Source of the DNA: Octopus bimaculoides
Taxonomy: Eukaryota
DNA: 33,421 nucleotides
Reading direction: 5' to 3'
Assembly: GCF_001194135.2 (NCBI RefSeq)
Contig: NC_068983.1
Span: 40,025,780 to 40,059,200 of the forward strand
In this document: in pieces, positions 1,701-33,351 of the stretch
Layout of the letters: every line of letters begins with the position of its first letter
Numbering within the stretch: the first letter of the stretch is position 1
Program-made: the position numbers and the translations under genes
Notes under the pieces: generated by a model
Told to the model about the DNA's origin: nothing
Databases searched by the model: none
The model's input: the letters and a program-made list of their open reading frames with translations, nothing else

Positions 1701-1995
1701 TAAATATGTGCATTGGTAAGACAAGCAAATGAAGAAACCATCGCCTTGAGCCAACAGCTCAGTCAACAAAATGGCGTCGTGACTCACAGGTTTCATTCGT
1801 TACATCTCTGACTATGTATTTGATATCAAGACACCCTCGCCTCCTCTATTACACTGGAAACATGTATATTGCCATTACTGTGCAGAAAACACTATAATTA
1901 TCATCATCGTCCCTATCATTGCTGTTGTCGTTAGTATTTTTCATTCTATTATTACTACAAACTACTCTTAAAATGTTTTCTATGGCAAACAAGTC

Positions 1996-2004
1996 ACCAC
2001 CACC

Positions 2005-2064
<60 letters not shown>
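1996..2064. repeat. (CAC)n(TAC)n microsatellite; reads (GTA)n as the 3' tail of the adjacent minus-strand element
   Basis: Seen directly; abuts the family D copy. Confidence 0.9.
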
Positions 2065-2541
2065 GAGTGAGAGAGCAGCCCATGCCGTTAAAGTGACACA
2101 GGGGTAAAATATGCGAAGCCCATTATATCCATCATGACTAACCGTCTGATAAGGGTACACCAGGCACATGCATCACAACCATATGTGAACAACATGGCGA
2201 TCTCATGCCGAGATAAGCAAGCGCATGACCTTGCAGATGGAGCCCAATTAGAATTTTCTTCAAGTCGAATAGCCCATCCCGCTCAAAAGTTCCCTGAATA
2301 AGGGTTGTTTAAGAATGTTGAACGAAACACCCATGTTTCCTGAGGTAAATTATTGAAACCCAAAATAATTCCTCTCAACATAGGCTATGATGCCCCTCCC
2401 CACTACTTCTGCTCATGATCAGGGATGCACATATGGTCATCCACCAAGGGACATGCTCAACTGGTTTGACAAACAAATCTGTGGTATTGAGCAGTTAAGA
2501 TGAGAAGTCATGAAAGCCACTGCCTGGTACTGCCTAGGGCA
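2065..2541 (-). mobile_element. Non-coding retroposon, family D (SINE-like or LINE 3' UTR-derived), copy 1
   Basis: Colinear high similarity over >400 bp to 28750-29212 (AAAGTGACAC..GGGGTA..CGAAGCCCA..ATCATGACTA.CCGTCTGATAA..GTACACCAGG); both end in a trinucleotide tail on the minus strand. Orientation inferred from the tail. Confidence 0.8.
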
Positions 2542-4747: not shown

Positions 4748-5001
4748 ACAAAATAAAGAAATCATTACTCATTACTCATAACTCAGAAAGGAATTCTCCA
4801 TGTGGAGCACAGAAACTGATTATTATTAGTAATTTAACCAAAGTTAGATTTGATCAACGGCGCTCCAGATGTGATCATTGTGTCTTTCATTTAAACACAG
4901 TGAATCTAGGAGTACATCATTATAGCTGTGTTTCCGCTTCTTTTTAAAAAGCAAGTGGGTATGATTTGAAGGGAAATTAGTTATCAATAGTAGCATATCC
5001 A

Positions 5002-5335
5002 AAGGCAGTGAACTAGCAGAATCGGTTGCACGCCGAGCAAAATTCTTAGCGATATTTCGTCTATATATACATTCTGAGTTCGAATTTCGTGAGGTCGACT
5101 TTGCTTTTCATTCTTTCGAGGTCGATAAAATAAATTAGCGGTATTTCGTCTGGCGCTACGTTCTGAGTTCAAATTCCACCGAGGTCGACTTTGCTTTTAC
5201 CCTTTGGGGTTTGATTAAATAAGTACCAGTTAAGAACTGAGGTCGACGTAATCGACGTAATCCCTTTGTCTGTCCTTGTTTGTCCCCTCTATGTTTAACC
5301 CCCTACGGGCAATAAAGACATAAATATTTCGACAG
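5002..5335 (+). mobile_element. SINE family A (tRNA-like head) with internal tandem duplication, tail type 1
   Basis: Degenerate GGCGGTGAGCTGGCAGAA head, B-box-like GAGTTCAAATTCC, core GAGGTCGACTTTGC..GTCGAT..AAGTACCAG, tail TTTGTCTGTCCTTGTTTGTCCCC..GGGCAATAAAG; matches 30304-30671. Confidence 0.85.
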
Positions 5336-8912: not shown

Positions 8913-9091
8913 GGCGCAGGCGTTGCTGTGTGGTAACAAGCTTGCTTCCCAATCACACACTCCTGGGTTCAGTACCACTGTGTGGCACATTGGGGGCAAG
9001 TGTCTTCTAATATAGCCTCAAGCCGATCAAAGCTTTGTGAGTCAATTTGGTAGACGGAGACTGAAAAAAAGCCCATCATATATATATGTGT

Positions 9092-9141
<50 letters not shown>

Positions 9142-11469: not shown

Positions 11470-11810
11470 GTGACTGTGTGGTGAAACGTTTGCTTTTCAA
11501 CCACATGGAACTGAGTTTAGCCCTGTTGCATGGCACCTTGGGCAAGTGACTTTTACTAAAACTCCAGGCCGACCAAAAGCTTGTGAGTGGACTCGTTCGG
11601 TGGAAACTGAAAGAGGCCTGTCGTATACGTGTGTGCGCGTGTGCGTGCGTATATATGTGTTTTTGTGCATTTGTGTATCATTGTGTGTGTTGTTGTATTT
11701 GTGTTTTTGTCCCACACCACCGCTTGACACGGTGTTTGTGTTTTTACGTCCCCGTAACTTAGCGGTTCGGCAAAAAGGCCGTTAGAAAAACTGCCAGGCT
11801 TAAACAAATA
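11470..11810 (+). mobile_element. SINE family B, 3'-truncated
   Basis: Colinear with 14184-14605. Confidence 0.85.
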
Positions 11811-11903
11811 ATCTGTTTCTTTAATTCATATGATAATTTCAGTTAGTATTTTTACCTGACTATTGACCTTGTCACAGCTAGATATTTGACTATATTCAAT
11901 ATA

Positions 11904-12124
11904 AAGGCGGTGAGCTGGTAGAATCGTTAGCACGCTGGGCGAAATGCTTAGTGGTCTTTCGTCTGTGTTTACGTTTTGAGTTCGAATTCCACCGAGGTCG
12001 ACTTTACCTTTCATCCTTCCGGGGTCGATATATTAAGTATCAGTTGTGTACTGGGGTCGATATAATCGACTGGCCCCCTCCTCCAAAATTTCGGGCCTTG
12101 TGCCTAGAGTAGAAAAGAATATTT
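11904..12124 (+). mobile_element. SINE family A, full length, tail type 2
   Basis: AAGGCGGTGAGCTGG head, GAGTTCGAATTCC B-box-like, core, tail CCAAAATTTCGGGCCTTGTGCCTAGAGTAGAAAAGAAT. Confidence 0.9.
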
Positions 12125-12531
12125 AATATAAGGGAAATGAACCGAAATGTAGTATTTGGTGTGGCCTGGGTACATAATCCGAATTACTGAAACAGAATTG
12201 TCGAGACTTGTCAGGTTTTGTTGATGTTGTTACTGTCATTGTCGCGGATCTCTTAGTTGTTTGTGTTCTTGTGTTCGTAGCAATTATGGACGCCTTGTAT
12301 TCTTCTTCTTCTTCTTCTTCTCATCATCATCATCAACAGTAGCACCAACAGTAGCAGCACTAGCATTATCATTCCCATCCTCTCCCTTCCCCTCCTCTCC
12401 CTTCCCCTCCTCTTCATTTAAGAACTGGTTTAAATTGGCAAAACAAAAACCAGTGGAGATGAGCAACTCATGTTTACATGGAGTGGGGTGAATATAGATA
12501 TATCATCTACAAATATAGAGACCAATACATA

Positions 12532-12563
12532 TCACAATCATCATTACCATCATCATCACCATC

Positions 12564-12595
<32 letters not shown>

Positions 12596-12857
12596 CATCA
12601 TCATCATTATTATCATCATCATCATCATCATCATCACCACTACCACCACCGAAATCATCATCATCATCCCGATCATCATCGTCATCATCATCATCTCCAT
12701 CACCACCATCATCATCATCATCATCTCCATCATCACCATCATCACCATCATCATCATCATCATCATTATCACTATCACTACCAAGATCACCAACACTACC
12801 ATCCAAACCACCACCACCACCACCACCACCATCATCATCATCATTATTACCATCACT

Positions 12858-12893
<36 letters not shown>

Positions 12894-12908
12894 GTCATCA
12901 TCATCACC
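12532..12908. repeat. ~380 bp compound (CAT)/(CAC) trinucleotide tract
   Basis: Seen directly; source of the poly-H/S/M/D ORFs. Confidence 0.95.
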
Positions 12909-14089
12909 GCCAAAAATTAGAAAGAATCAATGTAAATATGACCGAAGCTTTGTTAACGGGAAATAATATTCGAACCCATGATAGAAGCAGTCAAAATATT
13001 TTCTGAATTCTTCGTCTATTCTAACTTAAAACACATTTTCTAAAGTACGGAGTAGAAACGTCTAATAATGCCAATAATAGTTTGGTCTTAAAACGGCATC
13101 AGCTACACACCTGCTCTTGGCATGATCAGTCATGCGCAACAGCGGGAATACTACTTTGCAGGCTTTAACTAAGTTTACGTTAGCGTTCAGCCTTCATTTC
13201 AACAGATTGCACTGGTTTTCTGTTTAAATCTTACAGAGTGTGAAATAGATTTTTACTAGACATGACATAATAATAGTCATTGAGAGGAAAGTGGCGTGGA
13301 AGGGTGTGGACAGGGTGAGAAGAGATCAGTTTGTTTGTTCATGAGTATCTTGAATAATGCTAGGCTCCTTATCTCACTGCCGTTTTTCTATCGACTTGCG
13401 AGTCGGCGGTACGGGAGAGTGGAATATGTCAATGGTACTTCGGCGGCAAGTCAAAATGTATCAGAACAGAGGAAAGAATCTCCAGTCTTAAGAACTAGAT
13501 TAAATTCAATACCCAAAGACTGCCCTCTTCTATCGACGTTCCTATCAGCATTGTGCATACAATAAGACCAGACTCGCTGAACTAAGGCAATCGATCGCTT
13601 GTTCTGTTTCTCTCTCTTTTCCAAGAGATTCTTTGATTGACAGAACTAATTTAAACTGGAGCCTCTTGAAGCAAGAAAAATGACATTCGCTTAGATTGAA
13701 ACGGATATATCATGAACGCTGTTTGCTTCACTTAAAGATTGGGAACTATAAAGAAAGAAAGTAGTCGAATATAAACAAATAAAACAGGGCAGTGAACTCA
13801 GCGGCTTTACTTAAGTTCGGCTTGTTGTAAAGCTGTGTTCGACAATGTTGGTCAATACTAGTTCACAGGCTAAAATACGAGTTTACAATTTTCTAGAAAG
13901 ACTGCCCCAGGCCTTACTTTGTGCAATTAAACCTATTTGTCACATACTATAAGGTACTGCATTTTAGCGTTCGGCATTTGACTCCCGATAACAATATGAC
14001 GATTATCTTGGGTGGAATATGAATAGGTAAATTATAGGTAGTCGATGAAAGATCAGTGCTTTGTATATCCCTGTGGTAAATAAAAGAGA

Positions 14090-14184: not shown

Positions 14185-14343
14185 GGAGTAGTTGTGTGGT
14201 AAGCAGCTTGCTTACTAACCACATGGTTCCGAGTTCAGTCCCACTGCGTGGTACCTTGGGCAAGTGTCTTCTGCTATAGCCTCGGGCCGACCAAAGTCTT
14301 CTGAGTGGATTTGGTAGACGGAAACTAAAAGAAGCCCGTCGTA

Positions 14344-14395
<52 letters not shown>

Positions 14396-14601
14396 CTTCT
14401 GTGTCTGTGTTTGCCCCCAACCATCGCTTGATAACAGATGGTGGTGTGTTTACGTCCCCGTAACTTAGTGGTTCGGCAAAAGAGACCGATAGAATAAGTA
14501 GTAGGCTTCCAAAGAATAAGTCCTGGGGTCGATTTGCTCGACTAAAGGTGGTGCTCCAGCATGGCCGCAGTCAAATGACTAAAACAAGTAAAAGAGTAAA
14601 A

Positions 14602-16067: not shown

Positions 16068-16214
16068 GGTGCACACGTGGTTGTATGGTAAGAAATTTAA
16101 TTTGGGGTTCCGCCCCGCTACGTGGCACCTTGGGCAAGTGTCTTCTACTTCAACCTCAATCCGACTAAAACGTTGCGATTGGATTAAGTAGATGGAAACT
16201 GAAAGAAGCCTGTC

Positions 16215-16259
<45 letters not shown>

Positions 16260-16765
16260 AACACACACACATATATATATAGACATGTATGCATGCATGG
16301 ATGTATGCACGTATGTATGTTTGTGTGTGTGTGTGTGCCACGTGATTACATTACCGATCAGACTATCGGATGTTGTTACACATCGCTGATCACAGTGCGC
16401 TTTATATCGTTATAGCTTTCGGATAACACCACCGCCCTGTCCCGGCGAGCAGGTCAACTTTTCCCTTCTGATGGAAAAGAGCAATGTGAAGCGAAGTGCT
16501 CTGCTCAAGAACACAACGCGTATTTCTTTGTGCCTTTGTTTGTCCCCCACCATCGCTTGAGAATCGGTTTCAGTTTGCTTGTCTCTGAAACTAGCGGTTT
16601 GACAAATAGGTAACGACAGAATAAGTACCAGGCTTTACAAAAAAGAAAATAAAAGAGCCCAAAAAACGGGTAACAAATAAGTACTGGCGTAGATTTGTTC
16701 AGCTAAACTCCCCAAAGCGATGCCCCAGCATGGCCGCAGTCAAGAGACTGAAACAGGGAAGAGAT
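16068..16765 (+). mobile_element. SINE family B interrupted by a ~180 bp foreign segment (~16340-16520)
   Basis: 5' half 16068-16340 and 3' half ~16520-16765 both colinear with 14184-14605; the middle is unrelated. Confidence 0.75.
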
Positions 16766-17520: not shown

Positions 17521-17526
17521 TAATAA

Positions 17527-17742
17527 TCCTTTCTATTATAAGCACAAGGCTTGAAATTTTGTGGGAGGGGACTGGTTGATTACACCGACCCCAGCAATTT
17601 ACTGGTACTTATTTTATCGATACCCGAAAGGATGAAAGGAAAAGTCGACCTCGGCGGAATTTGAACTCAGAACCTAGCGATGGGTGAAATACCGCTAAGC
17701 ATTTCGTCCAGCGCGATAACGATTCTGCCAGCTCACCGCCTT
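17527..17742 (-). mobile_element. SINE family A, full length, tail type 2
   Basis: Reverse complement of 11904-12124 including the head (CCAGCTCACCGCCTT). Confidence 0.9.
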
Positions 17743-18739: not shown

Positions 18740-18830
18740 TGGCACCTTGGGCAAGTGTCTTCTACTATAGCGAAGGGCCGACCAAAGCTTGGTGAGTAGA
18801 TTTGGTAAACGGAAACTGAAAGAAGCCCAT

Positions 18831-18876
<46 letters not shown>

Positions 18877-19186
18877 TGTGTGTGTGTGTGTGTGTATGCG
18901 CGCGCATGTGTGTGAGTGTATATATATGTATGTATATGTATATACATCCATATATATATATACATATCTGTGTGTGTCTGTGTATGTGCGTGTGTGTTGT
19001 GTGTCTTTGTCTTTGTATGTGTGCCCCCATTATCGCTTGGTGACTGATGCTGGTGTGTTTACGCCCCCGCAAAATAAACCAACAAAATATGTACCGAGTT
19101 TTAAAAAACATACAGGCGTCAATTCGTTCTACCAAAAAAATCTCCACCATGGCCACACTCAAATGACTGAAACAAGTAAAAGATAG
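18740..19186 (+). mobile_element. SINE family B, head-truncated, with expanded internal microsatellite
   Basis: Starts at GGCACCTTGGGCAAG, ends AAATGACTGAAACAAGTAAAAGA. Confidence 0.85.
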
Positions 19187-19335
19187 AAATTAACAAACTT
19201 TCGACATTTTCTGCTAAATTTCATGAATGTCTTACATATTTTGTCTGTGCCTTTGATATCTCGTGTTTTTAATCTTTAAATCAGGCGTGTTGTTTCTGGA
19301 ACTTATACAAGTGTGAATACATGCGTATATATATA

Positions 19336-20164
19336 CGTGGTCTGATCAATAGGTATCCGGACTGTTGACATGGTGACGAATCTAAAGTACGCAAAGTGAA
19401 GCCACTTGGCAAAGATTGACCTTCAGCTTTGCTTTGCATGTGCATTAAGTTTTAACGTTCTAGCTCACTTCCGCTGTTTACAGCAATACTTGGAAGGAAC
19501 GTGTGTAGCGTGTGATCGTCGCATTGACCATGACAGAAAGCTGAGCAGAGAATTTGCATAAAATTTGGCTAACATCTTGATAATACCTGCTCAGAAGCCT
19601 ACGCAAAATTTTCAAAAGGTTTTCATCGTTCTCGACAGAATCAAGGCAGACACACGTCTCATACCAAAATCTTCAGTGACAATGGACTAAACTGAACAGC
19701 AACTCATATACATATCTTCTGATAACTCACAGATGGTGATTCGACGATTTCCCCTCACAGGTGCACGCACATCTGCGATGTTTTTCTCACTTCTGCTGGT
19801 TGCGGGTCTCCCGAACGTTCGTCAATAATCAAAATTTTTGGTCATTTTGGAAACGTCTGAACTACTCGTACACGTGTGTGTTGCTGATATACTCCTCTCT
19901 ATACGATACACTTTCTATAACTTTGCGTTGGCCTCTGAGCAAGTATCGCCATGACAATTTTCTCTGTCATGGCCAATGTGACGATCACACGCTACACACG
20001 TTCCTTCCAGGCACAGCTGTGAACAGCGGAAGTGAGCTAGAACATTAAAACAGTGTGTGCATGCACAGCAAAGTTTAGGGCCAATCTATGCCAAGCGACT
20101 ATACTCTGTGTGCTTTAGCTTCGTTACTATGGCAAAAGTCCGGATAGTTATTGATCATACCTCG
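19336..20164. mobile_element. Non-autonomous mariner (Tc1/mariner) fold-back derivative made of two inverted 5' ends
   Basis: TA on both flanks; 28 bp termini match as inverted repeats with 4 mismatches and similarity continues ~280 bp inward. Plus arm: MTE..EQRICIKFG*HLDNTCSEAYAK. Minus arm (~19970-19645): MTEK..GDTCSEANAKL..FRRFQND..IDERSGRPATSRSEKNIADVRA..NRRITI.ELSED..TEDFGMRRVSA, typical of the mariner transposase N-terminal HTH region. Confidence 0.9.
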
Positions 20165-20419
20165 TATATATATATATATATATATATAAATGAGTATGTC
20201 TGAAACTGACTGGTAGAGCAACAAGAGATAGCAGGAAAAAGAAGGTTTAGTTGCTTCAAGGGATGATGTTAGGAAAATTATTGCTCGGGATTTCAATATC
20301 GTCTGGTTCGATCTGGTCTATCTTCTCTCTCGGGGAAATGAATTAAGTTTCACTAATACAATCAGTACGATTCAATTAAATGTTTTCTGCTTTCGCGCAA
20401 ACACAAAAATGCGCTCATA

Positions 20420-25279: not shown

Positions 25280-25324
<45 letters not shown>

Positions 25325-25326
<2 letters not shown>

Positions 25327-25460
25327 CGACAGGCCTCTATCAACTTCTGTCTACCAAATTCACTCACAAGTCTTTGATCGACCCGAGACTATAGTAGAAG
25401 ACACTTGTCCGAGACTGAACCCGAAACCATGTGGTTGGGAAGCAAAGTTTTTACTACACA
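25325..25460 (-). mobile_element. SINE family B 5' part
   Basis: Reverse complement of head to microsatellite of family B. Confidence 0.8.
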
Positions 25461-25706
25461 GAAACACACGCACACACACACAAGCACGCGCACACACACA
25501 CACACGTACACTGGGCCACGAATATCATATAAGCATATACAAATATTTGTATGCATTGACATACACACAAACATATACAGACACACACAGTCGCTGAAAT
25601 AGGTATGCGGTTAAGAAGCGAGCTCTACAATCGAGTTGTTTCGTGTTCAAATCCACGGCGCGGCAAATATAGCGCCGTACCAACCAATGTAGTGTGAATG
25701 AATTAA

Positions 25707-28645: not shown

Positions 28646-28696
<51 letters not shown>

Positions 28697-28748
28697 TATT
28701 ATTATTATTGTTATTATTATTATTAGGATTATTATTATTATTACTATT
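28527..28748. repeat. (TTC)n(CAT)n(TAT)n compound microsatellite
   Basis: Seen directly. Confidence 0.95.
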
Positions 28749-28749
28749 G

Positions 28750-29212
28750 AAGGAAAGCGTAATGCTTGGTGTCAAAGTGACACTGGGGTACAAATATACG
28801 AAGCCCAATATACTTATCATGACTACCCGTCTGATAATGGTACACCAGGTGCATGCATCACAACCATATGTGCGCGACATAGTGATCTCATATCAAGATA
28901 AACAGCGCATAACCTTGCAGGTGGGGCTCAGTTAGAATTTTCTTCAGGTCGAGTAGCCCATCCCGCTCAAAACGTCACTGAATAAGGTTTGTTTAAACAT
29001 GATGAACGAAACACTCATGTTTCCAGGGATGAATTATTCAGACCCCACAAAATTCCTCTCAACACATGGCTATGATGCTCCCCCACTACTCCTACTCGAG
29101 GTCAGAGATGCACATATCGTCAACCGCTAAGGGACATCCTCAACTGGTTAAGGTCAAACAACTGACAAGCAAATCTGTGAGATTGAGCAGAATATCTTTT
29201 TTACCAAGACAC
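28750..29212 (-). mobile_element. Family D retroposon, copy 2, with (TAA)n tail
   Basis: Colinear with 2065-2541. Confidence 0.8.
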
Positions 29213-30303: not shown

Positions 30304-30671
30304 AGGGCGGTGAGCTGGCAGAAACGTTAGCACGCCGGGCGAAATGCTTAGCGGTATTTCGTCTGCCGCTACGTTCTGTGTTCAAAGTCCGACATTGCTT
30401 TCATCTTTTCGGAGTCGATTAAATAAGTACCAGTTACACACTGGGGTCGATATAATCGACTTAATCCGTTTGCCTGTCCTTGTTTGTCCCTTCTGTGTGT
30501 AGCCCCTTATGGGCAGTAAAGAAATAAGAAACGTTAGCACGCGTTCTGAGTTCAAATTCCGCCGAGGTCGACTTTGCCTTTCATCCTTTCGGGGTCGATA
30601 AATTAAGTACCAGTTACGCACTGGGGTCGATAAAATCGACTTAATCCATTTGTCTGTCCTTGTTTGTCCCC
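30304..30671 (+). mobile_element. Head-to-tail dimer of SINE family A (tail type 1), running into a gap
   Basis: Full copy to ~30530, then GAAACGTTAGCACGC fused to GTTCTGAGTTCAAATTCC and a second core and tail. Confidence 0.9.
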
Positions 30672-31635: not shown

Positions 31636-32114
31636 GGGCGTATGCTTGTATGTATGTGTATTTCTATGGAAGCATCGTATTTGTATGTGTTCATGCATGT
31701 ATGAGAGAGAGAGAGAGAGACAGACAGAGAAATACAGAGAGAGGCAGACAGACAGACAGACAGACAGCAGACAAACAGACAGAGTATGTATGCTTATATG
31801 AGAGCACATATGCGGGTATGCGTGATTGCACACACCTCTGTATGCTTACATATATGTATGCATGTGTGTGCACCTATGTAAGCACGCATATGTGCATGTA
31901 TGTTTGTGTATAAAAGAGAGATGGAGAGAAAGAGAGAAAAGGAGAGAGAATGGAGATATATATATATTTATACACATACACACACACACACATGTATTGT
32001 CCGTCTGTTAAATTTGACTACTGCAAAATGTTCTTAGTTGCTGCTACGATATATAGAATCTCAGCATCCTTTTTCAGACCCTGATATCTAGCACCGAGAT
32101 TTGCCTGGTAAGCA

Positions 32115-32181
32115 GTGACCGGACGCTTTCCACTGATGATTCCCAGTAGAAAGAAATCATGGGATATAGGAATTCCGGCAC
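32115..32181 (+). ncRNA. Type I hammerhead ribozyme-like motif, copy A (core intact)
   Basis: Stem I 5' GUG(A)CCGGA-CGCU-UUCCA; CUGAUGA (32133-32139); stem II UUCC-CAGUA-GAAA; GAAA (32153-32156); stem III AUC-AUGG-GAU; A17 (32166, AUA triplet); stem I 3' UAGGAA-U-UCCGGCAC. One mismatch in stem II and one in stem I. Confidence 0.6.
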
Positions 32182-32442
32182 CCATAACAGACGATCCTCG
32201 TTTGCTGTGACCTATGGGTTTGCTTTTATGCACCAAGCGACTAAGTGAGAGGATCTCTCTAGGCTAATGACGCTGTATTCGGTATCCTAACACGATGTCC
32301 ATGTTAAGTTGAATATAAAGATTACTTTTTGGTACTAATACCGCTTATGTCACTGATAATTAATTTTAAATAAGCCTGCTGGTTAATTGCGAGATCAGTA
32401 TCTGAAAAAATACTGATATCAGCGAGATTTGACTGGTATGAT

Positions 32443-32510
32443 GTGACAGGACTCTTCCCGTTGATTATTTCCAGTAGAATGAAATCACTTGATATGGGAA
32501 TTGCGGCGTC
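32443..32510 (+). ncRNA. Type I hammerhead-like motif, copy B (core mutated to UUGAUUA, probably inactive)
   Basis: Stem I UUCCCG/UGGGAA; UUGAUUA (32461-32467); stem II UUUC-CAGUA-GAAU; GAAA (32481-32484); stem III AUC-ACUU-GAU; A17 at 32494. 70/90 nt identical to copy A without gaps. Confidence 0.45.
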
Positions 32511-32579
32511 TCTGACAAATATCATCTGCTACGATTTAGGTGTACCAATATAAGAGAGTTTGTCAGGGCTATTAGCGCA

Positions 32580-32601
32580 TATCTATCTATCTATCTCTCT
32601 C

Positions 32602-32641
<40 letters not shown>

Positions 32642-32649: not shown

Positions 32650-32790
32650 CAGGTGTGGTAGTTCCAGATACAATTCCCCTGCGTGACACCTCGAAAAAGT
32701 GTCTCCTACTGTAGCCCTGTGACGACCAAAGCCTTGTAAGTGTATTTGGTGGAGGAAAACTGAAAGAAGTCTCTCGTATATATTGTATAT
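32650..32790 (+). mobile_element. Degenerate SINE family B 5' part
   Basis: CCCCTGCGTGACACCTCG..AAGTGTCTCCTACTGTAGCC..GACCAAAGCCTTGT..GAAAACTGAAAGAAG..TCGTATATAT. Confidence 0.75.
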
Positions 32791-32818
32791 AGGGTATAAA
32801 TATCTATATAGTACATAT

Positions 32819-32865
<47 letters not shown>

Positions 32866-33159: not shown

Positions 33160-33235
33160 ATAATTGTGTGATAAGAAGTTAGTTTCCGAACCGCATTGAT
33201 TCCGAGTTCAGTCCCACTGCGTGGCACCTTTGGCA
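33160..33235 (+). mobile_element. SINE family B tRNA-like head only
   Basis: TTGTGTGATAAGAAG..TTCCGAGTTCAGTCCCACTGCGTGGCACCTTTGGCA. Confidence 0.75.
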
Positions 33236-33351
33236 CGTTTCAAAACAAAGGAATACCGTTAGGGTGGTAGTAGAGACGACGATGGTGTTGATAATGGCGG
33301 TTGTGGTCGTGATAATGGTGACGAGGATAGCTATTTGGGGGAATAATAAGC

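What the first reader, a model, noticed from the sequence alone, without database searches (positions are those of the whole stretch)
32056..32580. Tandem type I hammerhead ribozyme pair 328 nt apart: candidate decayed non-LTR retrozyme (circRNA-forming unit)
Seen: two diverged direct copies (32093-32182 vs 32421-32510, 70/90 identical, with patchy similarity continuing to ~32275/~32580). Both fold on the plus strand as stem I - CUGAUGA (B: UUGAUUA) - stem II - GAAA - stem III - AUA - stem I. Their consensus restores a flawless fold (stem I UUCCCR/UGGGAA, stem II UUUC/GAAA with CAGUA loop, stem III AUC/GAU), and 3 of 4 stem III loop bases differ (AUGG vs ACUU) while the stem is invariant. Copy A also has an outer stem I with an internal loop, as in natural type I hammerheads. 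Established: metazoan non-LTR retrozymes are short tandem units, each with a type I hammerhead, that yield monomeric and circular RNAs. Inference: cleavage at 32166 and 32494 would release a 328 nt monomer. Copy B has lost the C3-G8 pair, so this locus is probably a relic of a family that may have active members elsewhere. I do not recall a described cephalopod retrozyme of this form. Atypical points: U-A rather than G-C closing stem II, and an AUA triplet.
Basis: partly seen in the sequence, partly recalled or inferred. Interest (0 to 1): 0.85.

Follow-up and report, generated by a model that had tools for sequence, protein, structure and literature searches.

The report
Possible decayed hammerhead repeat pair
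Two diverged copies of a ~100-base block sit 328 bases apart, and one spells a weak hammerhead-ribozyme pattern; it may be a dead relic of a self-cleaving mobile repeat or a chance look-alike, and the genome-wide copies that would settle it were out of reach.

Summary
The repeat is real: 32089-32179 vs 32417-32507 is 72/91 identical at 328-nt spacing. No third copy lies in the window. Copy A carries an exact CUGAUGA...GAAA...UA core. Its helices have the sizes given for canonical metazoan type I hammerheads (6 bp, 4 bp, 2 bp plus tetraloop), with a distal stem I. A motif this good is expected 0.0003-0.02 times per window under a Markov null. A 13-mer (12/13 identical) brackets the pair like a target-site duplication of one 472-nt, 1.44-unit insertion.

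The case is not proven. Rfam gives no hit at gathering. Copy A reaches only 10.5 bits against Hammerhead_HH9 (threshold 52), and copy B gives no hammerhead hit. Helix II is A-U rich and lacks G10.1-C11.1. The hammerhead fold is 11-15 kcal/mol worse than competing folds, even for the best-of-both consensus. No pair has changed on both sides, and the core diverges as fast as its flanks. The 328-nt monomer folds no better than shuffles. No relatives were found in any reachable collection.

Minus-strand exons and a C/D snoRNA are poorly supported. Verdict: a candidate inactive hammerhead-repeat relic (about 0.45) against chance resemblance in an ordinary duplicate (about 0.4).

The parts
32041..32053 (+). 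Left copy of the 13-mer CTGCTACGATATA, a possible target-site duplication.
   Evidence: It matches 32526-32538 at 12/13. Only 9 of 1000 shuffles of 66-nt flanks reach this score. It ends 4 nt before the left limit of the A/B homology.
32058..32088 (+). Left arm of unit A: a small hairpin region (ATCTCAG...CTGATAT).
   Evidence: It is similar to the reverse complement of 32391-32419 (26/31 with one gap; 3 of 300 shuffles). The arms match directly and the loop is inverted between the two copies.
32081..32179 (+). Repeat copy A (the significantly alignable block).
   Evidence: 79% identity to copy B, spacing 328.
32115..32181 (+). Hammerhead-like motif A. Distal stem I 32115-32122 / 32175-32181. 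Proximal stem I 32127-32132 / 32167-32172. CUGAUGA 32133-32139. Stem II 32140-32143 / 32149-32152. GAAA 32153-32156. Stem III 32156-32158 / 32163-32165. Predicted cleavage after A 32166.
   Evidence: Searches give the pairs (stem I 5/6, stem II 3/4, stem III 3/3). Hammerhead_HH9 10.5 bits, E=3.7; the best structure containing all the hammerhead pairs scores -3.7 kcal/mol against an MFE of -18.5.
32223..32390 (+). Single-copy middle of the putative 328-nt unit.
   Evidence: It has no similarity to the sequence left of A or right of B. This is expected for a 1.4-mer and is equally compatible with two separate copies.
32391..32419 (+). Left arm of unit B: a perfect 8-bp hairpin, ATCAGTAT / ATACTGAT.
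   Evidence: (chance-level DicF alignment that shows the hairpin).
32412..32507 (+). Repeat copy B.
32443..32509 (+). Degenerate hammerhead-like motif B. The core reads UUGAUUA at 32461-32467 (C3 to U, G8 to U). GAAA 32481-32484. A17 at 32494.
   Evidence: stem I 6/6, stem II 3/4 with U.U at its base, stem III 3/3, distal stem 5/7; no hammerhead match.
32526..32538 (+). Right copy of the 13-mer, CTGCTACGATTTA.

Best explanation
The locus is most likely a dead relic of a hammerhead-bearing short retroelement of the non-LTR retrozyme / Penelope-pLTR kind. It would have been inserted once as about 1.44 head-to-tail units (32054-32525, unit 328 nt) between copies of the target 13-mer CTGCTACGAT(A/T)TA.

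In the living element (inferred from the published retrozyme model, not shown here), the multimeric transcript would cut itself after the A of GAUA in each type I hammerhead. That releases a 328-nt monomer, which a host ligase circularises and a Penelope-like reverse transcriptase copies back into DNA as more-than-unit tandems.

At this locus both ribozymes are predicted inactive. Copy B has lost C3 and G8. Copy A keeps the core but has mismatches in helices I and II and folds much more stably into other hairpins.

Shown: the repeat, the motif, its rarity by chance, and the bracketing 13-mer. Inferred: descent from an active ribozyme, the single-insertion history, and every step of the RNA cycle.
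For: - Copy A has an exact 7+4-nt core plus U16.1-A17, and is the only such site in the window.
- Helix sizes of 6/4/2 bp plus a tetraloop, and an internal loop followed by a distal stem I, fit the canonical metazoan type I description (PMC4209133).
- 35 of 40 pair cells are formed in the two copies, against 30-57% when the partners are slid.
- Every mismatch is private to one copy, so the common ancestor may have been fully paired.
- Chance expectation under an order-3 Markov model is 3e-4 to 2e-2 per window, and 2e-6 to 1e-4 for the two blocks.
- The 328-nt spacing and GC of about 0.34-0.47 fit the retrozyme range (PMC7229834).
- The shared-plus-unique layout fits a 1.44-mer.
- The flanking 13-mer is 12/13 identical; 9 of 1000 shuffles reach its score.
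Against: - There is no Rfam match at gathering. The best hammerhead score is 10.5 bits against a threshold of 52, with 4 non-canonical pairs, and C/D snoRNA models score as high.
- Helix II is U-A, U-A, C.A, C-G (B: U.U, U-A, U-A, C-G), without the nearly universal G10.1-C11.1.
- The best structure containing all the hammerhead pairs is 11-15 kcal/mol above the MFE in A, in B and even in the best-of-both consensus. A competing 8-bp hairpin, AUGAUUYC/GAAAUCAU, swallows the core.
- Fold z-scores are about 0.
- RNAalifold does not recover the hammerhead.
- There are 0 double-sided changes. Divergence is 11/51 in the motif and 8/37 in the 5' flank, the same rate, and 2 core bases differ.
- The 'private mismatch' pattern also holds for the competing hairpin, so it is not specific to the hammerhead.
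- No other copy was found in the window or in any reachable collection.
- The descriptor thresholds were set after seeing copy A.
Confidence: 0.45

Rival explanations
1. Chance resemblance. The two blocks are an ordinary diverged local duplication, or two neighbouring copies of an uncharacterised low-copy interspersed repeat, in a genome packed with such repeats. The CUGAUGA...GAAA pattern with short A/U-rich stems is fortuitous, and no ribozyme ever existed here.
For: - The window is full of dispersed repeats at 70-89% identity, the same range as A/B.
- Rfam scores are at noise level.
- The region is rich in overlapping U-rich/A-rich inverted repeats that pair in several registers, and the hammerhead is never the preferred fold.
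- There is no sign of selection on core or helices.
- About 30-1700 such motifs are expected by chance in a 2.7-Gb genome, depending on stringency.
- The literature warns that relaxed hammerhead descriptors give mostly false positives (PMC6155905).
Against: - Expectation for the two blocks themselves is only 2e-6 to 1e-4.
- Helix and loop sizes fall at the canonical values rather than anywhere in the allowed ranges.
- A distal stem I is present in copy A.
- Both of copy A's mismatches are paired in copy B.
- The bracketing 13-mer fits a single insertion.
Confidence: 0.4
2. The blocks are duplicated minus-strand coding exons (for example mutually exclusive exons) or fragments of a transposon ORF.
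For: The same minus-strand frame is open through both blocks (72 and 67 aa ORFs...IPISxDFxLLxIIxGKxPVTxYQxNL...) and has the best synonymous to non-synonymous ratio of the six frames, 6:10.
Against: - Differences fall 5/6/8 on codon positions 1/2/3, so there is no clear third-position excess.
- Stop-free stretches this long arise in 6-8% of shuffles of each region.
- There is no Pfam match even at E<=10 and no homologue among 5.8 billion proteins.
- AG/GT sites are not at aligned positions in the two copies, and a 4-nt indel lies at each edge of the block (read).
Confidence: 0.04
3. Copy A is a C/D-box snoRNA-like gene, with UGAUGA as box C and UUCC/GGAA as the terminal stem.
For: There are weak matches to SNORD66 (14.2 bits, E=0.5), SNORD49 and snoR77Y.
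Against: - All matches are far below gathering (32-52 bits).
- There is no CUGA box D next to the terminal stem.
- Copy B has lost box C.
Confidence: 0.01

Closest known systems
[quoted passage not shown]
   Same: The two motifs are in the same orientation at 328-nt spacing. GC is low. The motif has type I topology with a short helix III. A flanking direct repeat longer than 4 bp may be a target-site duplication. The unit has no ORF.
   Different: There are only 1.44 units and no family could be shown. The motif fails Rfam thresholds. One core is mutated. Helix II lacks G10.1-C11.1. The monomer shows no unusually stable self-paired fold (z=-0.22). Expression is unknown.
Canonical metazoan type I hammerheads (Schistosoma Sm-alpha, newt satellite 2; Rfam Hammerhead_1 / Hammerhead_HH9, clan CL00010)
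   Same: The core of copy A, helix I of 6 positions followed by an internal loop and a distal stem, helix II of 4 positions with a 5-nt loop starting CA and ending UA, helix III of 2 bp plus tetraloop, and an NUH cleavage triplet (AUA).
   Different: The score is 10.5 bits against a gathering threshold of 52. Helix II is A-U rich with a mismatch. The helix III loop is not palindromic. The loop 1-loop 2 contacts could not be assessed. The hammerhead is not the favoured fold.
Axolotl HHR_Amex2 retrozyme ribozyme (PMC7229834)
   Same: A U.U mismatch at the base of helix II (as in copy B), helix III of two pairs plus tetraloop, and a unit of about 330-350 bp.
   Different: Amex2 has tens of thousands of copies and measured (weak, dimer-enhanced) self-cleavage. 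Here there is a single locus, and copy B also lacks C3 and G8.
Minimal hammerheads in pseudo-LTRs of Penelope-like elements (PMC4209133; bioRxiv 10.64898/2026.07.22.740005)
   Same: A hammerhead in a directly repeated terminal segment of a retroelement, and a more-than-unit insertion.
   Different: Penelope-element minimal hammerheads have a long helix II (7-8 bp), a short helix I and essentially no helix III. No RT or GIY-YIG ORF lies between the copies here.

Membership tests
Hammerhead ribozyme (Rfam clan CL00010) | Conserved core C3U4G5A6N7G8A9 ... G12A13A14 ... A15.1-U16.1, H17 | tested here: inconclusive
   Copy A has the complete core (CUGAUGA, GAAA, U, A17). Copy B reads UUGAUUA, so C3 and G8 are lost.
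Hammerhead ribozyme (Rfam clan CL00010) | Three helices around the core | tested here: inconclusive
   A: helix I 5/6, II 3/4, III 3/3. B: 6/6, 3/4, 3/3. Sizes are canonical, but every helix is short and helix II is nearly all A-U.
Hammerhead ribozyme (Rfam clan CL00010) | Covariance-model score at or above the family gathering threshold | tested here: not met
   There is no hit at gathering. Copy A scores 10.5 bits against 52 for Hammerhead_HH9, E=3.7 in a 71-nt search. Copy B has none.
Hammerhead ribozyme (Rfam clan CL00010) | G10.1-C11.1 closing helix II (nearly universal; part of the A9/G10.1 metal site, from established knowledge) | tested here: not met
   U10.1-A11.1 in A and U10.1.U11.1 in B.
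Hammerhead ribozyme (Rfam clan CL00010) | The hammerhead secondary structure is an accessible, competitive fold | tested here: not met
   Best structure with all hammerhead pairs against MFE: -3.7 vs -18.5 (A), -3.7 vs -14.7 (B), -14.8 vs -26.3 kcal/mol (best-of-both). RNAalifold does not recover it.
Hammerhead ribozyme (Rfam clan CL00010) | Helices supported by compensatory changes | tested here: inconclusive
   With two sequences only, there are 0 double-sided changes, 4 compatible one-sided changes and 5 disruptive changes.
Hammerhead ribozyme (Rfam clan CL00010) | Loop 1-loop 2 tertiary contacts | not tested
   An internal loop (ACGC/UU) and a 5-nt loop 2 (CAGUA) exist, but I had no curated contact rules or 3D tool to test them.
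Hammerhead ribozyme (Rfam clan CL00010) | Self-cleavage 3' of H17 | not testable with these tools
   Needs in vitro transcription of copy A, of the consensus, and of dimeric constructs.
Metazoan non-LTR retrozyme | Head-to-tail tandem units of 150-450 bp, each with a type I hammerhead | tested here: inconclusive
   Two motifs lie 328 nt apart. The shared segments (32058-32179 / 32391-32507) and the unique middle fit a 1.44-mer. TRF sees no array, and two separate copies would look the same.
Metazoan non-LTR retrozyme | Multi-copy family in the genome | not testable with these tools
   The source genome is not in any searchable collection. There is no third copy in the 33-kb window and none in metagenome or viral contigs.
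Metazoan non-LTR retrozyme | Low GC (<45-50%) and target-site duplications longer than 4 bp when present | tested here: inconclusive
   GC is 0.34-0.47 across the unit, but the whole window is 0.32, so this does not discriminate. The flanking 13-mer is 12/13 identical; 9 of 1000 shuffles reach its score.
Metazoan non-LTR retrozyme | Monomer RNA with a stable, highly self-paired fold | tested here: not met
   32167-32494 folds at -74.1 kcal/mol against shuffles at -73.0+-5.2, z=-0.22.
Metazoan non-LTR retrozyme | Expressed as linear and circular RNA | not testable with these tools
   No transcript data.
Protein-coding exon pair (minus strand) | Open frame with purifying selection, homologues and conserved splice sites | tested here: not met
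   The frame is open but not significantly so. Codon positions of the differences are 5/6/8. There is no Pfam or protein-database match. Splice sites are not aligned.
C/D box snoRNA | Box C + box D + terminal stem; Rfam threshold | tested here: not met
   Matches are 12-14 bits against thresholds of 32-52. There is no CUGA box D, and box C is lost in copy B.

The most novel reading that the evidence does not exclude
The locus is a fossil of a hitherto undescribed cephalopod family of non-LTR retrozymes. Its type I hammerhead would use an all-A/U helix II (U10.1-A11.1) and an AUA cleavage triplet. Intact, circRNA-producing members would exist elsewhere in the genome.
Probability: 0.2. Interest if true: 0.55.

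Novelty: new member of a known kind. Interest (0 to 1): 0.35.

Why it matters
If a family stands behind this locus, it would extend hammerhead retrozymes, and their abundant small circular RNAs, to cephalopods. I found no described case there: two full-text searches returned none, and three retrozyme papers do not mention cephalopods. It would also add a natural hammerhead variant with an unusual helix II. This single, decayed and probably inactive locus has little functional weight of its own. Its value is as a probe sequence for a genome-wide search.

Tried and rejected
- **Rfam:** a search at gathering on the whole window, then at E<=10 on 601 nt and on each 71-nt motif. There was no significant family; hammerhead and snoRNA hits are at noise level.
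- **Thermodynamics:** single-sequence folds of both strands, the alifold consensus and the monomer fold. None prefers the hammerhead, and all z-scores are near 0.
- **Coding reading:** six-frame translation, codon-position counts, Pfam, one search of the 5.8-billion protein set and ORF-length shuffles. It is not supported.
- **More copies:** blastn and nhmmer of the window, two scans of metagenome contigs, one of viral contigs, and exact-protein look-ups to find the source contig. All came back empty.
- **tRNA or SINE head:** ARAGORN found nothing, and the block matches none of the window's dispersed repeat families.
- **An argument I withdrew:** I first took the lack of similarity in the 'spacer' as evidence against a tandem origin. 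A 1.4-mer contains its middle only once, so that argument fails.
- **A hypothesis I dropped:** a 162-nt period with a 168-nt insertion. It would need the tail of unit A (about 32202-32219) to match the 32041-32053 / 32526-32538 13-mer. Neither that match nor the A-tail to B-tail similarity beats shuffles.

Full report
**Observation**

The window is an AT-rich draft eukaryotic sequence (32% GC, 4,665 N), full of microsatellites and dispersed repeats. I could not verify it with a tool.

The reported direct repeat is real. The blocks 32089-32179 and 32417-32507 are 72/91 identical without gaps, 328 nt apart. blastn gives E=1e-17. With two small indels, a local alignment runs 32081-32179 vs 32412-32507 and scores 91 against 18+-2 for shuffles.

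To the left, 32058-32088 resembles the reverse complement of 32391-32419 (3 of 300 shuffles). It is a small hairpin whose arms match directly while its loop is inverted between the copies. TRF finds no 328-nt period. No third copy exists in the window by blastn or nhmmer.

**The hammerhead reading, element by element**

Copy A reads as follows:
- Proximal stem I, 5' strand: UUUCCA.
- Core: CUGAUGA.
- Stem II and loop 2: UUCC-CAGUA-GAAA.
- Core: GAAA.
- Stem III and loop 3: UC-AUGG-GA, then U-A, with cleavage predicted after the A at 32166.
- Proximal stem I, 3' strand: UAGGAA.

Stem I forms 5 of 6 pairs, stem II 3 of 4, and stem III 3 of 3. A distal stem, GUG.CCGG/CCGGCAC, lies beyond an ACGC/UU internal loop.

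Copy B has stem I 6/6, stem II 3/4 with U.U at its base, and stem III 3/3. Its core reads UUGAUUA, so C3 and G8 are lost.

The sizes are those published for canonical metazoan type I hammerheads: helix I 6 bp, helix II 4 bp, and helix III 1-2 bp with a 2-4-nt loop (PMC4209133). The spacing falls in the 150-450-bp range of non-LTR retrozymes (PMC7229834).

**Is it more than chance?**

I wrote a descriptor that accepts anything at least as good as copy A and applied it to sequence drawn from an order-3 Markov model of the window. Expected counts per window:

| Descriptor | Expected per window |
|---|---|
| As good as copy A, wide loop ranges | 1.6e-3 |
| Canonical helix and loop sizes | 3.4e-4 |
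| Much looser descriptor | 1.8e-2 |

For the two blocks alone the expectation is 2e-6 to 1e-4. For a 2.7-Gb genome it is about 30-1,700 chance sites. Copy A is the only hit in the window.

There are two caveats. The thresholds were fixed after seeing copy A. Real DNA is also richer in local inverted repeats than a Markov chain. Even so, a purely accidental motif inside the only such duplicated block is not the default expectation.

**Evidence that weakens the ribozyme reading**

- Rfam finds nothing at gathering and nothing hammerhead-like at E<=10 in 601 nt.
- Only a 71-nt search brings up Hammerhead_HH9 for copy A, at 10.5 bits (threshold 52), E=3.7, with four non-canonical pairs. C/D snoRNA models score equally well.
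- Copy B gives no hammerhead match.
- Helix II is almost all A-U and lacks the G10.1-C11.1 pair.
AUGAUUYC and GAAAUCAU form a competing 8-bp hairpin that sequesters the core.
- Single-sequence folds are no more stable than shuffles (z=-0.29 and +0.93).
- RNAalifold does not recover the hammerhead.
- The predicted 328-nt monomer is not unusually structured (z=-0.22), unlike described retrozyme RNAs (PMC7761336).

**Evolutionary signal**

Differences are spread evenly: 11 of 51 positions in the motif and 8 of 37 in the 5' flank. Two of the conserved core bases differ.

On the 20 proposed pairs, 35 of 40 cells are paired, against 30-57% when the 3' partners are slid. No pair has changed on both sides. 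Four changes are compatible and one-sided, and five are disruptive.

Every mismatch is private to one copy. This fits descent from a fully paired ancestor. The same holds for the competing hairpin, because U-rich and A-rich strands pair in several registers, so it is not specific evidence. There has been no detectable selection on a ribozyme since the copies diverged. That fits both 'relic' and 'never a ribozyme'.

**Architecture of the locus**

The middle, 32223-32390, is single-copy. I first read this as evidence against a tandem origin, but a 1.4-mer of a 328-nt unit must look exactly like this.

A 13-mer, CTGCTACGATATA (32041-32053) and CTGCTACGATTTA (32526-32538), brackets the pair; 9 of 1000 shuffles reach its score. 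The left copy ends 4 nt before the homology begins. That suggests one 472-nt insertion (32054-32525, 1.44 units) with a target-site duplication. Such more-than-unit copies are expected from copying of a circular or multimeric template (PMC4209133, PMC7229834). The statistical support is modest, and I chose the flanks after seeing the repeat.

**Rivals**

*Minus-strand exons.* The same frame is open in both copies (72 and 67 aa). Several results count against coding:
- Stop-free stretches this long occur in 6-8% of shuffles.
- Differences fall 5/6/8 on codon positions 1/2/3.
- Pfam and the 5.8-billion protein set give nothing.
- Candidate AG/GT sites are not aligned between the copies.

*C/D snoRNA.* There is no box D, and all scores are at noise level.

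*Chance resemblance.* The strongest rival is an ordinary duplicate in a genome where dispersed repeats at 70-89% identity are everywhere. The literature warns that relaxed hammerhead searches yield many false positives (PMC6155905).

**Comparison with what is known, and novelty**

Functionally the model is the metazoan non-LTR retrozyme. Membership cannot be granted. The Rfam threshold, the G10.1-C11.1 pair, a competitive hammerhead fold and a stable monomer were tested and not met. The multi-copy family, self-cleavage and circular RNA could not be tested.

The closest natural parallel for the weak helix II is axolotl HHR_Amex2, which has a U.U at the base of helix II (PMC7229834). I found no described cephalopod retrozyme: two full-text searches returned none, and three retrozyme papers (one checked in its supplement only) do not mention cephalopods. 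Cephalopod Penelope-like remnants of the Naiad clade, which lack canonical hammerheads, are reported (PMC8557442).

**Verdict**

My estimates:

| Reading | Probability |
|---|---|
| Decayed, now inactive copy of a hammerhead-bearing repeat | about 0.45 |
| Chance resemblance in an ordinary duplicate | about 0.4 |
| Exons or other | less than 0.1 |

If true, it is a new member of a known kind and only a fossil. Its use is as a query for the decisive genome-wide search. Interest: 0.35.

Noticed in passing
window 32058-32088 and 32391-32419: A small hairpin sits at the left edge of each copy. Its arms are conserved in direct orientation but its loop (TTTTTCAG vs CTGAAAAA) is inverted between the copies, as after a hairpin-mediated loop inversion or template switch.
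   Followed up: partly
window 32580-32641, then 32676-32861 and 33161-33241: A (TATC)15 microsatellite follows copy B directly. After it come two fragments of a SINE-like family that has at least six other copies in the window (for example 14189-14600, 16105-16290, 18740-18898, 8918-9141, 11475-11801, 25305-25465) at 70-85% identity.
   Followed up: partly
window 30306-30671, with relatives at 5001-5323, 11903-12071 and 17522-17742: A second dispersed repeat family is present, including two adjacent head-to-tail copies (30372-30490 / 30542-30670, 84% identical) next to an N gap.
   Followed up: no
window 19326-19537 and 19963-20174: A 212-nt inverted repeat pair, 83% identical, has arms about 425 nt apart. 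It may be a foldback or MITE-like element or an inverted duplication.
   Followed up: no
window 1994-2494 and 28678-29190: This is the longest repeat in the window: about 510 nt, 78% identical, in direct orientation, 26.7 kb apart.
   Followed up: no
window 12470-13006: A long imperfect trinucleotide (CAT/CAC-type) array reads as poly-His, poly-Ser or poly-Asp/Met runs in different frames. It inflates the ORF list but is not coding evidence.
   Followed up: no
whole window: The window has 4,665 N in several gaps of about 0.4-1 kb, mostly flanked by (TA)n/(TATA)n arrays. This is a draft assembly, so repeat copy numbers in the window are lower bounds.
   Followed up: no
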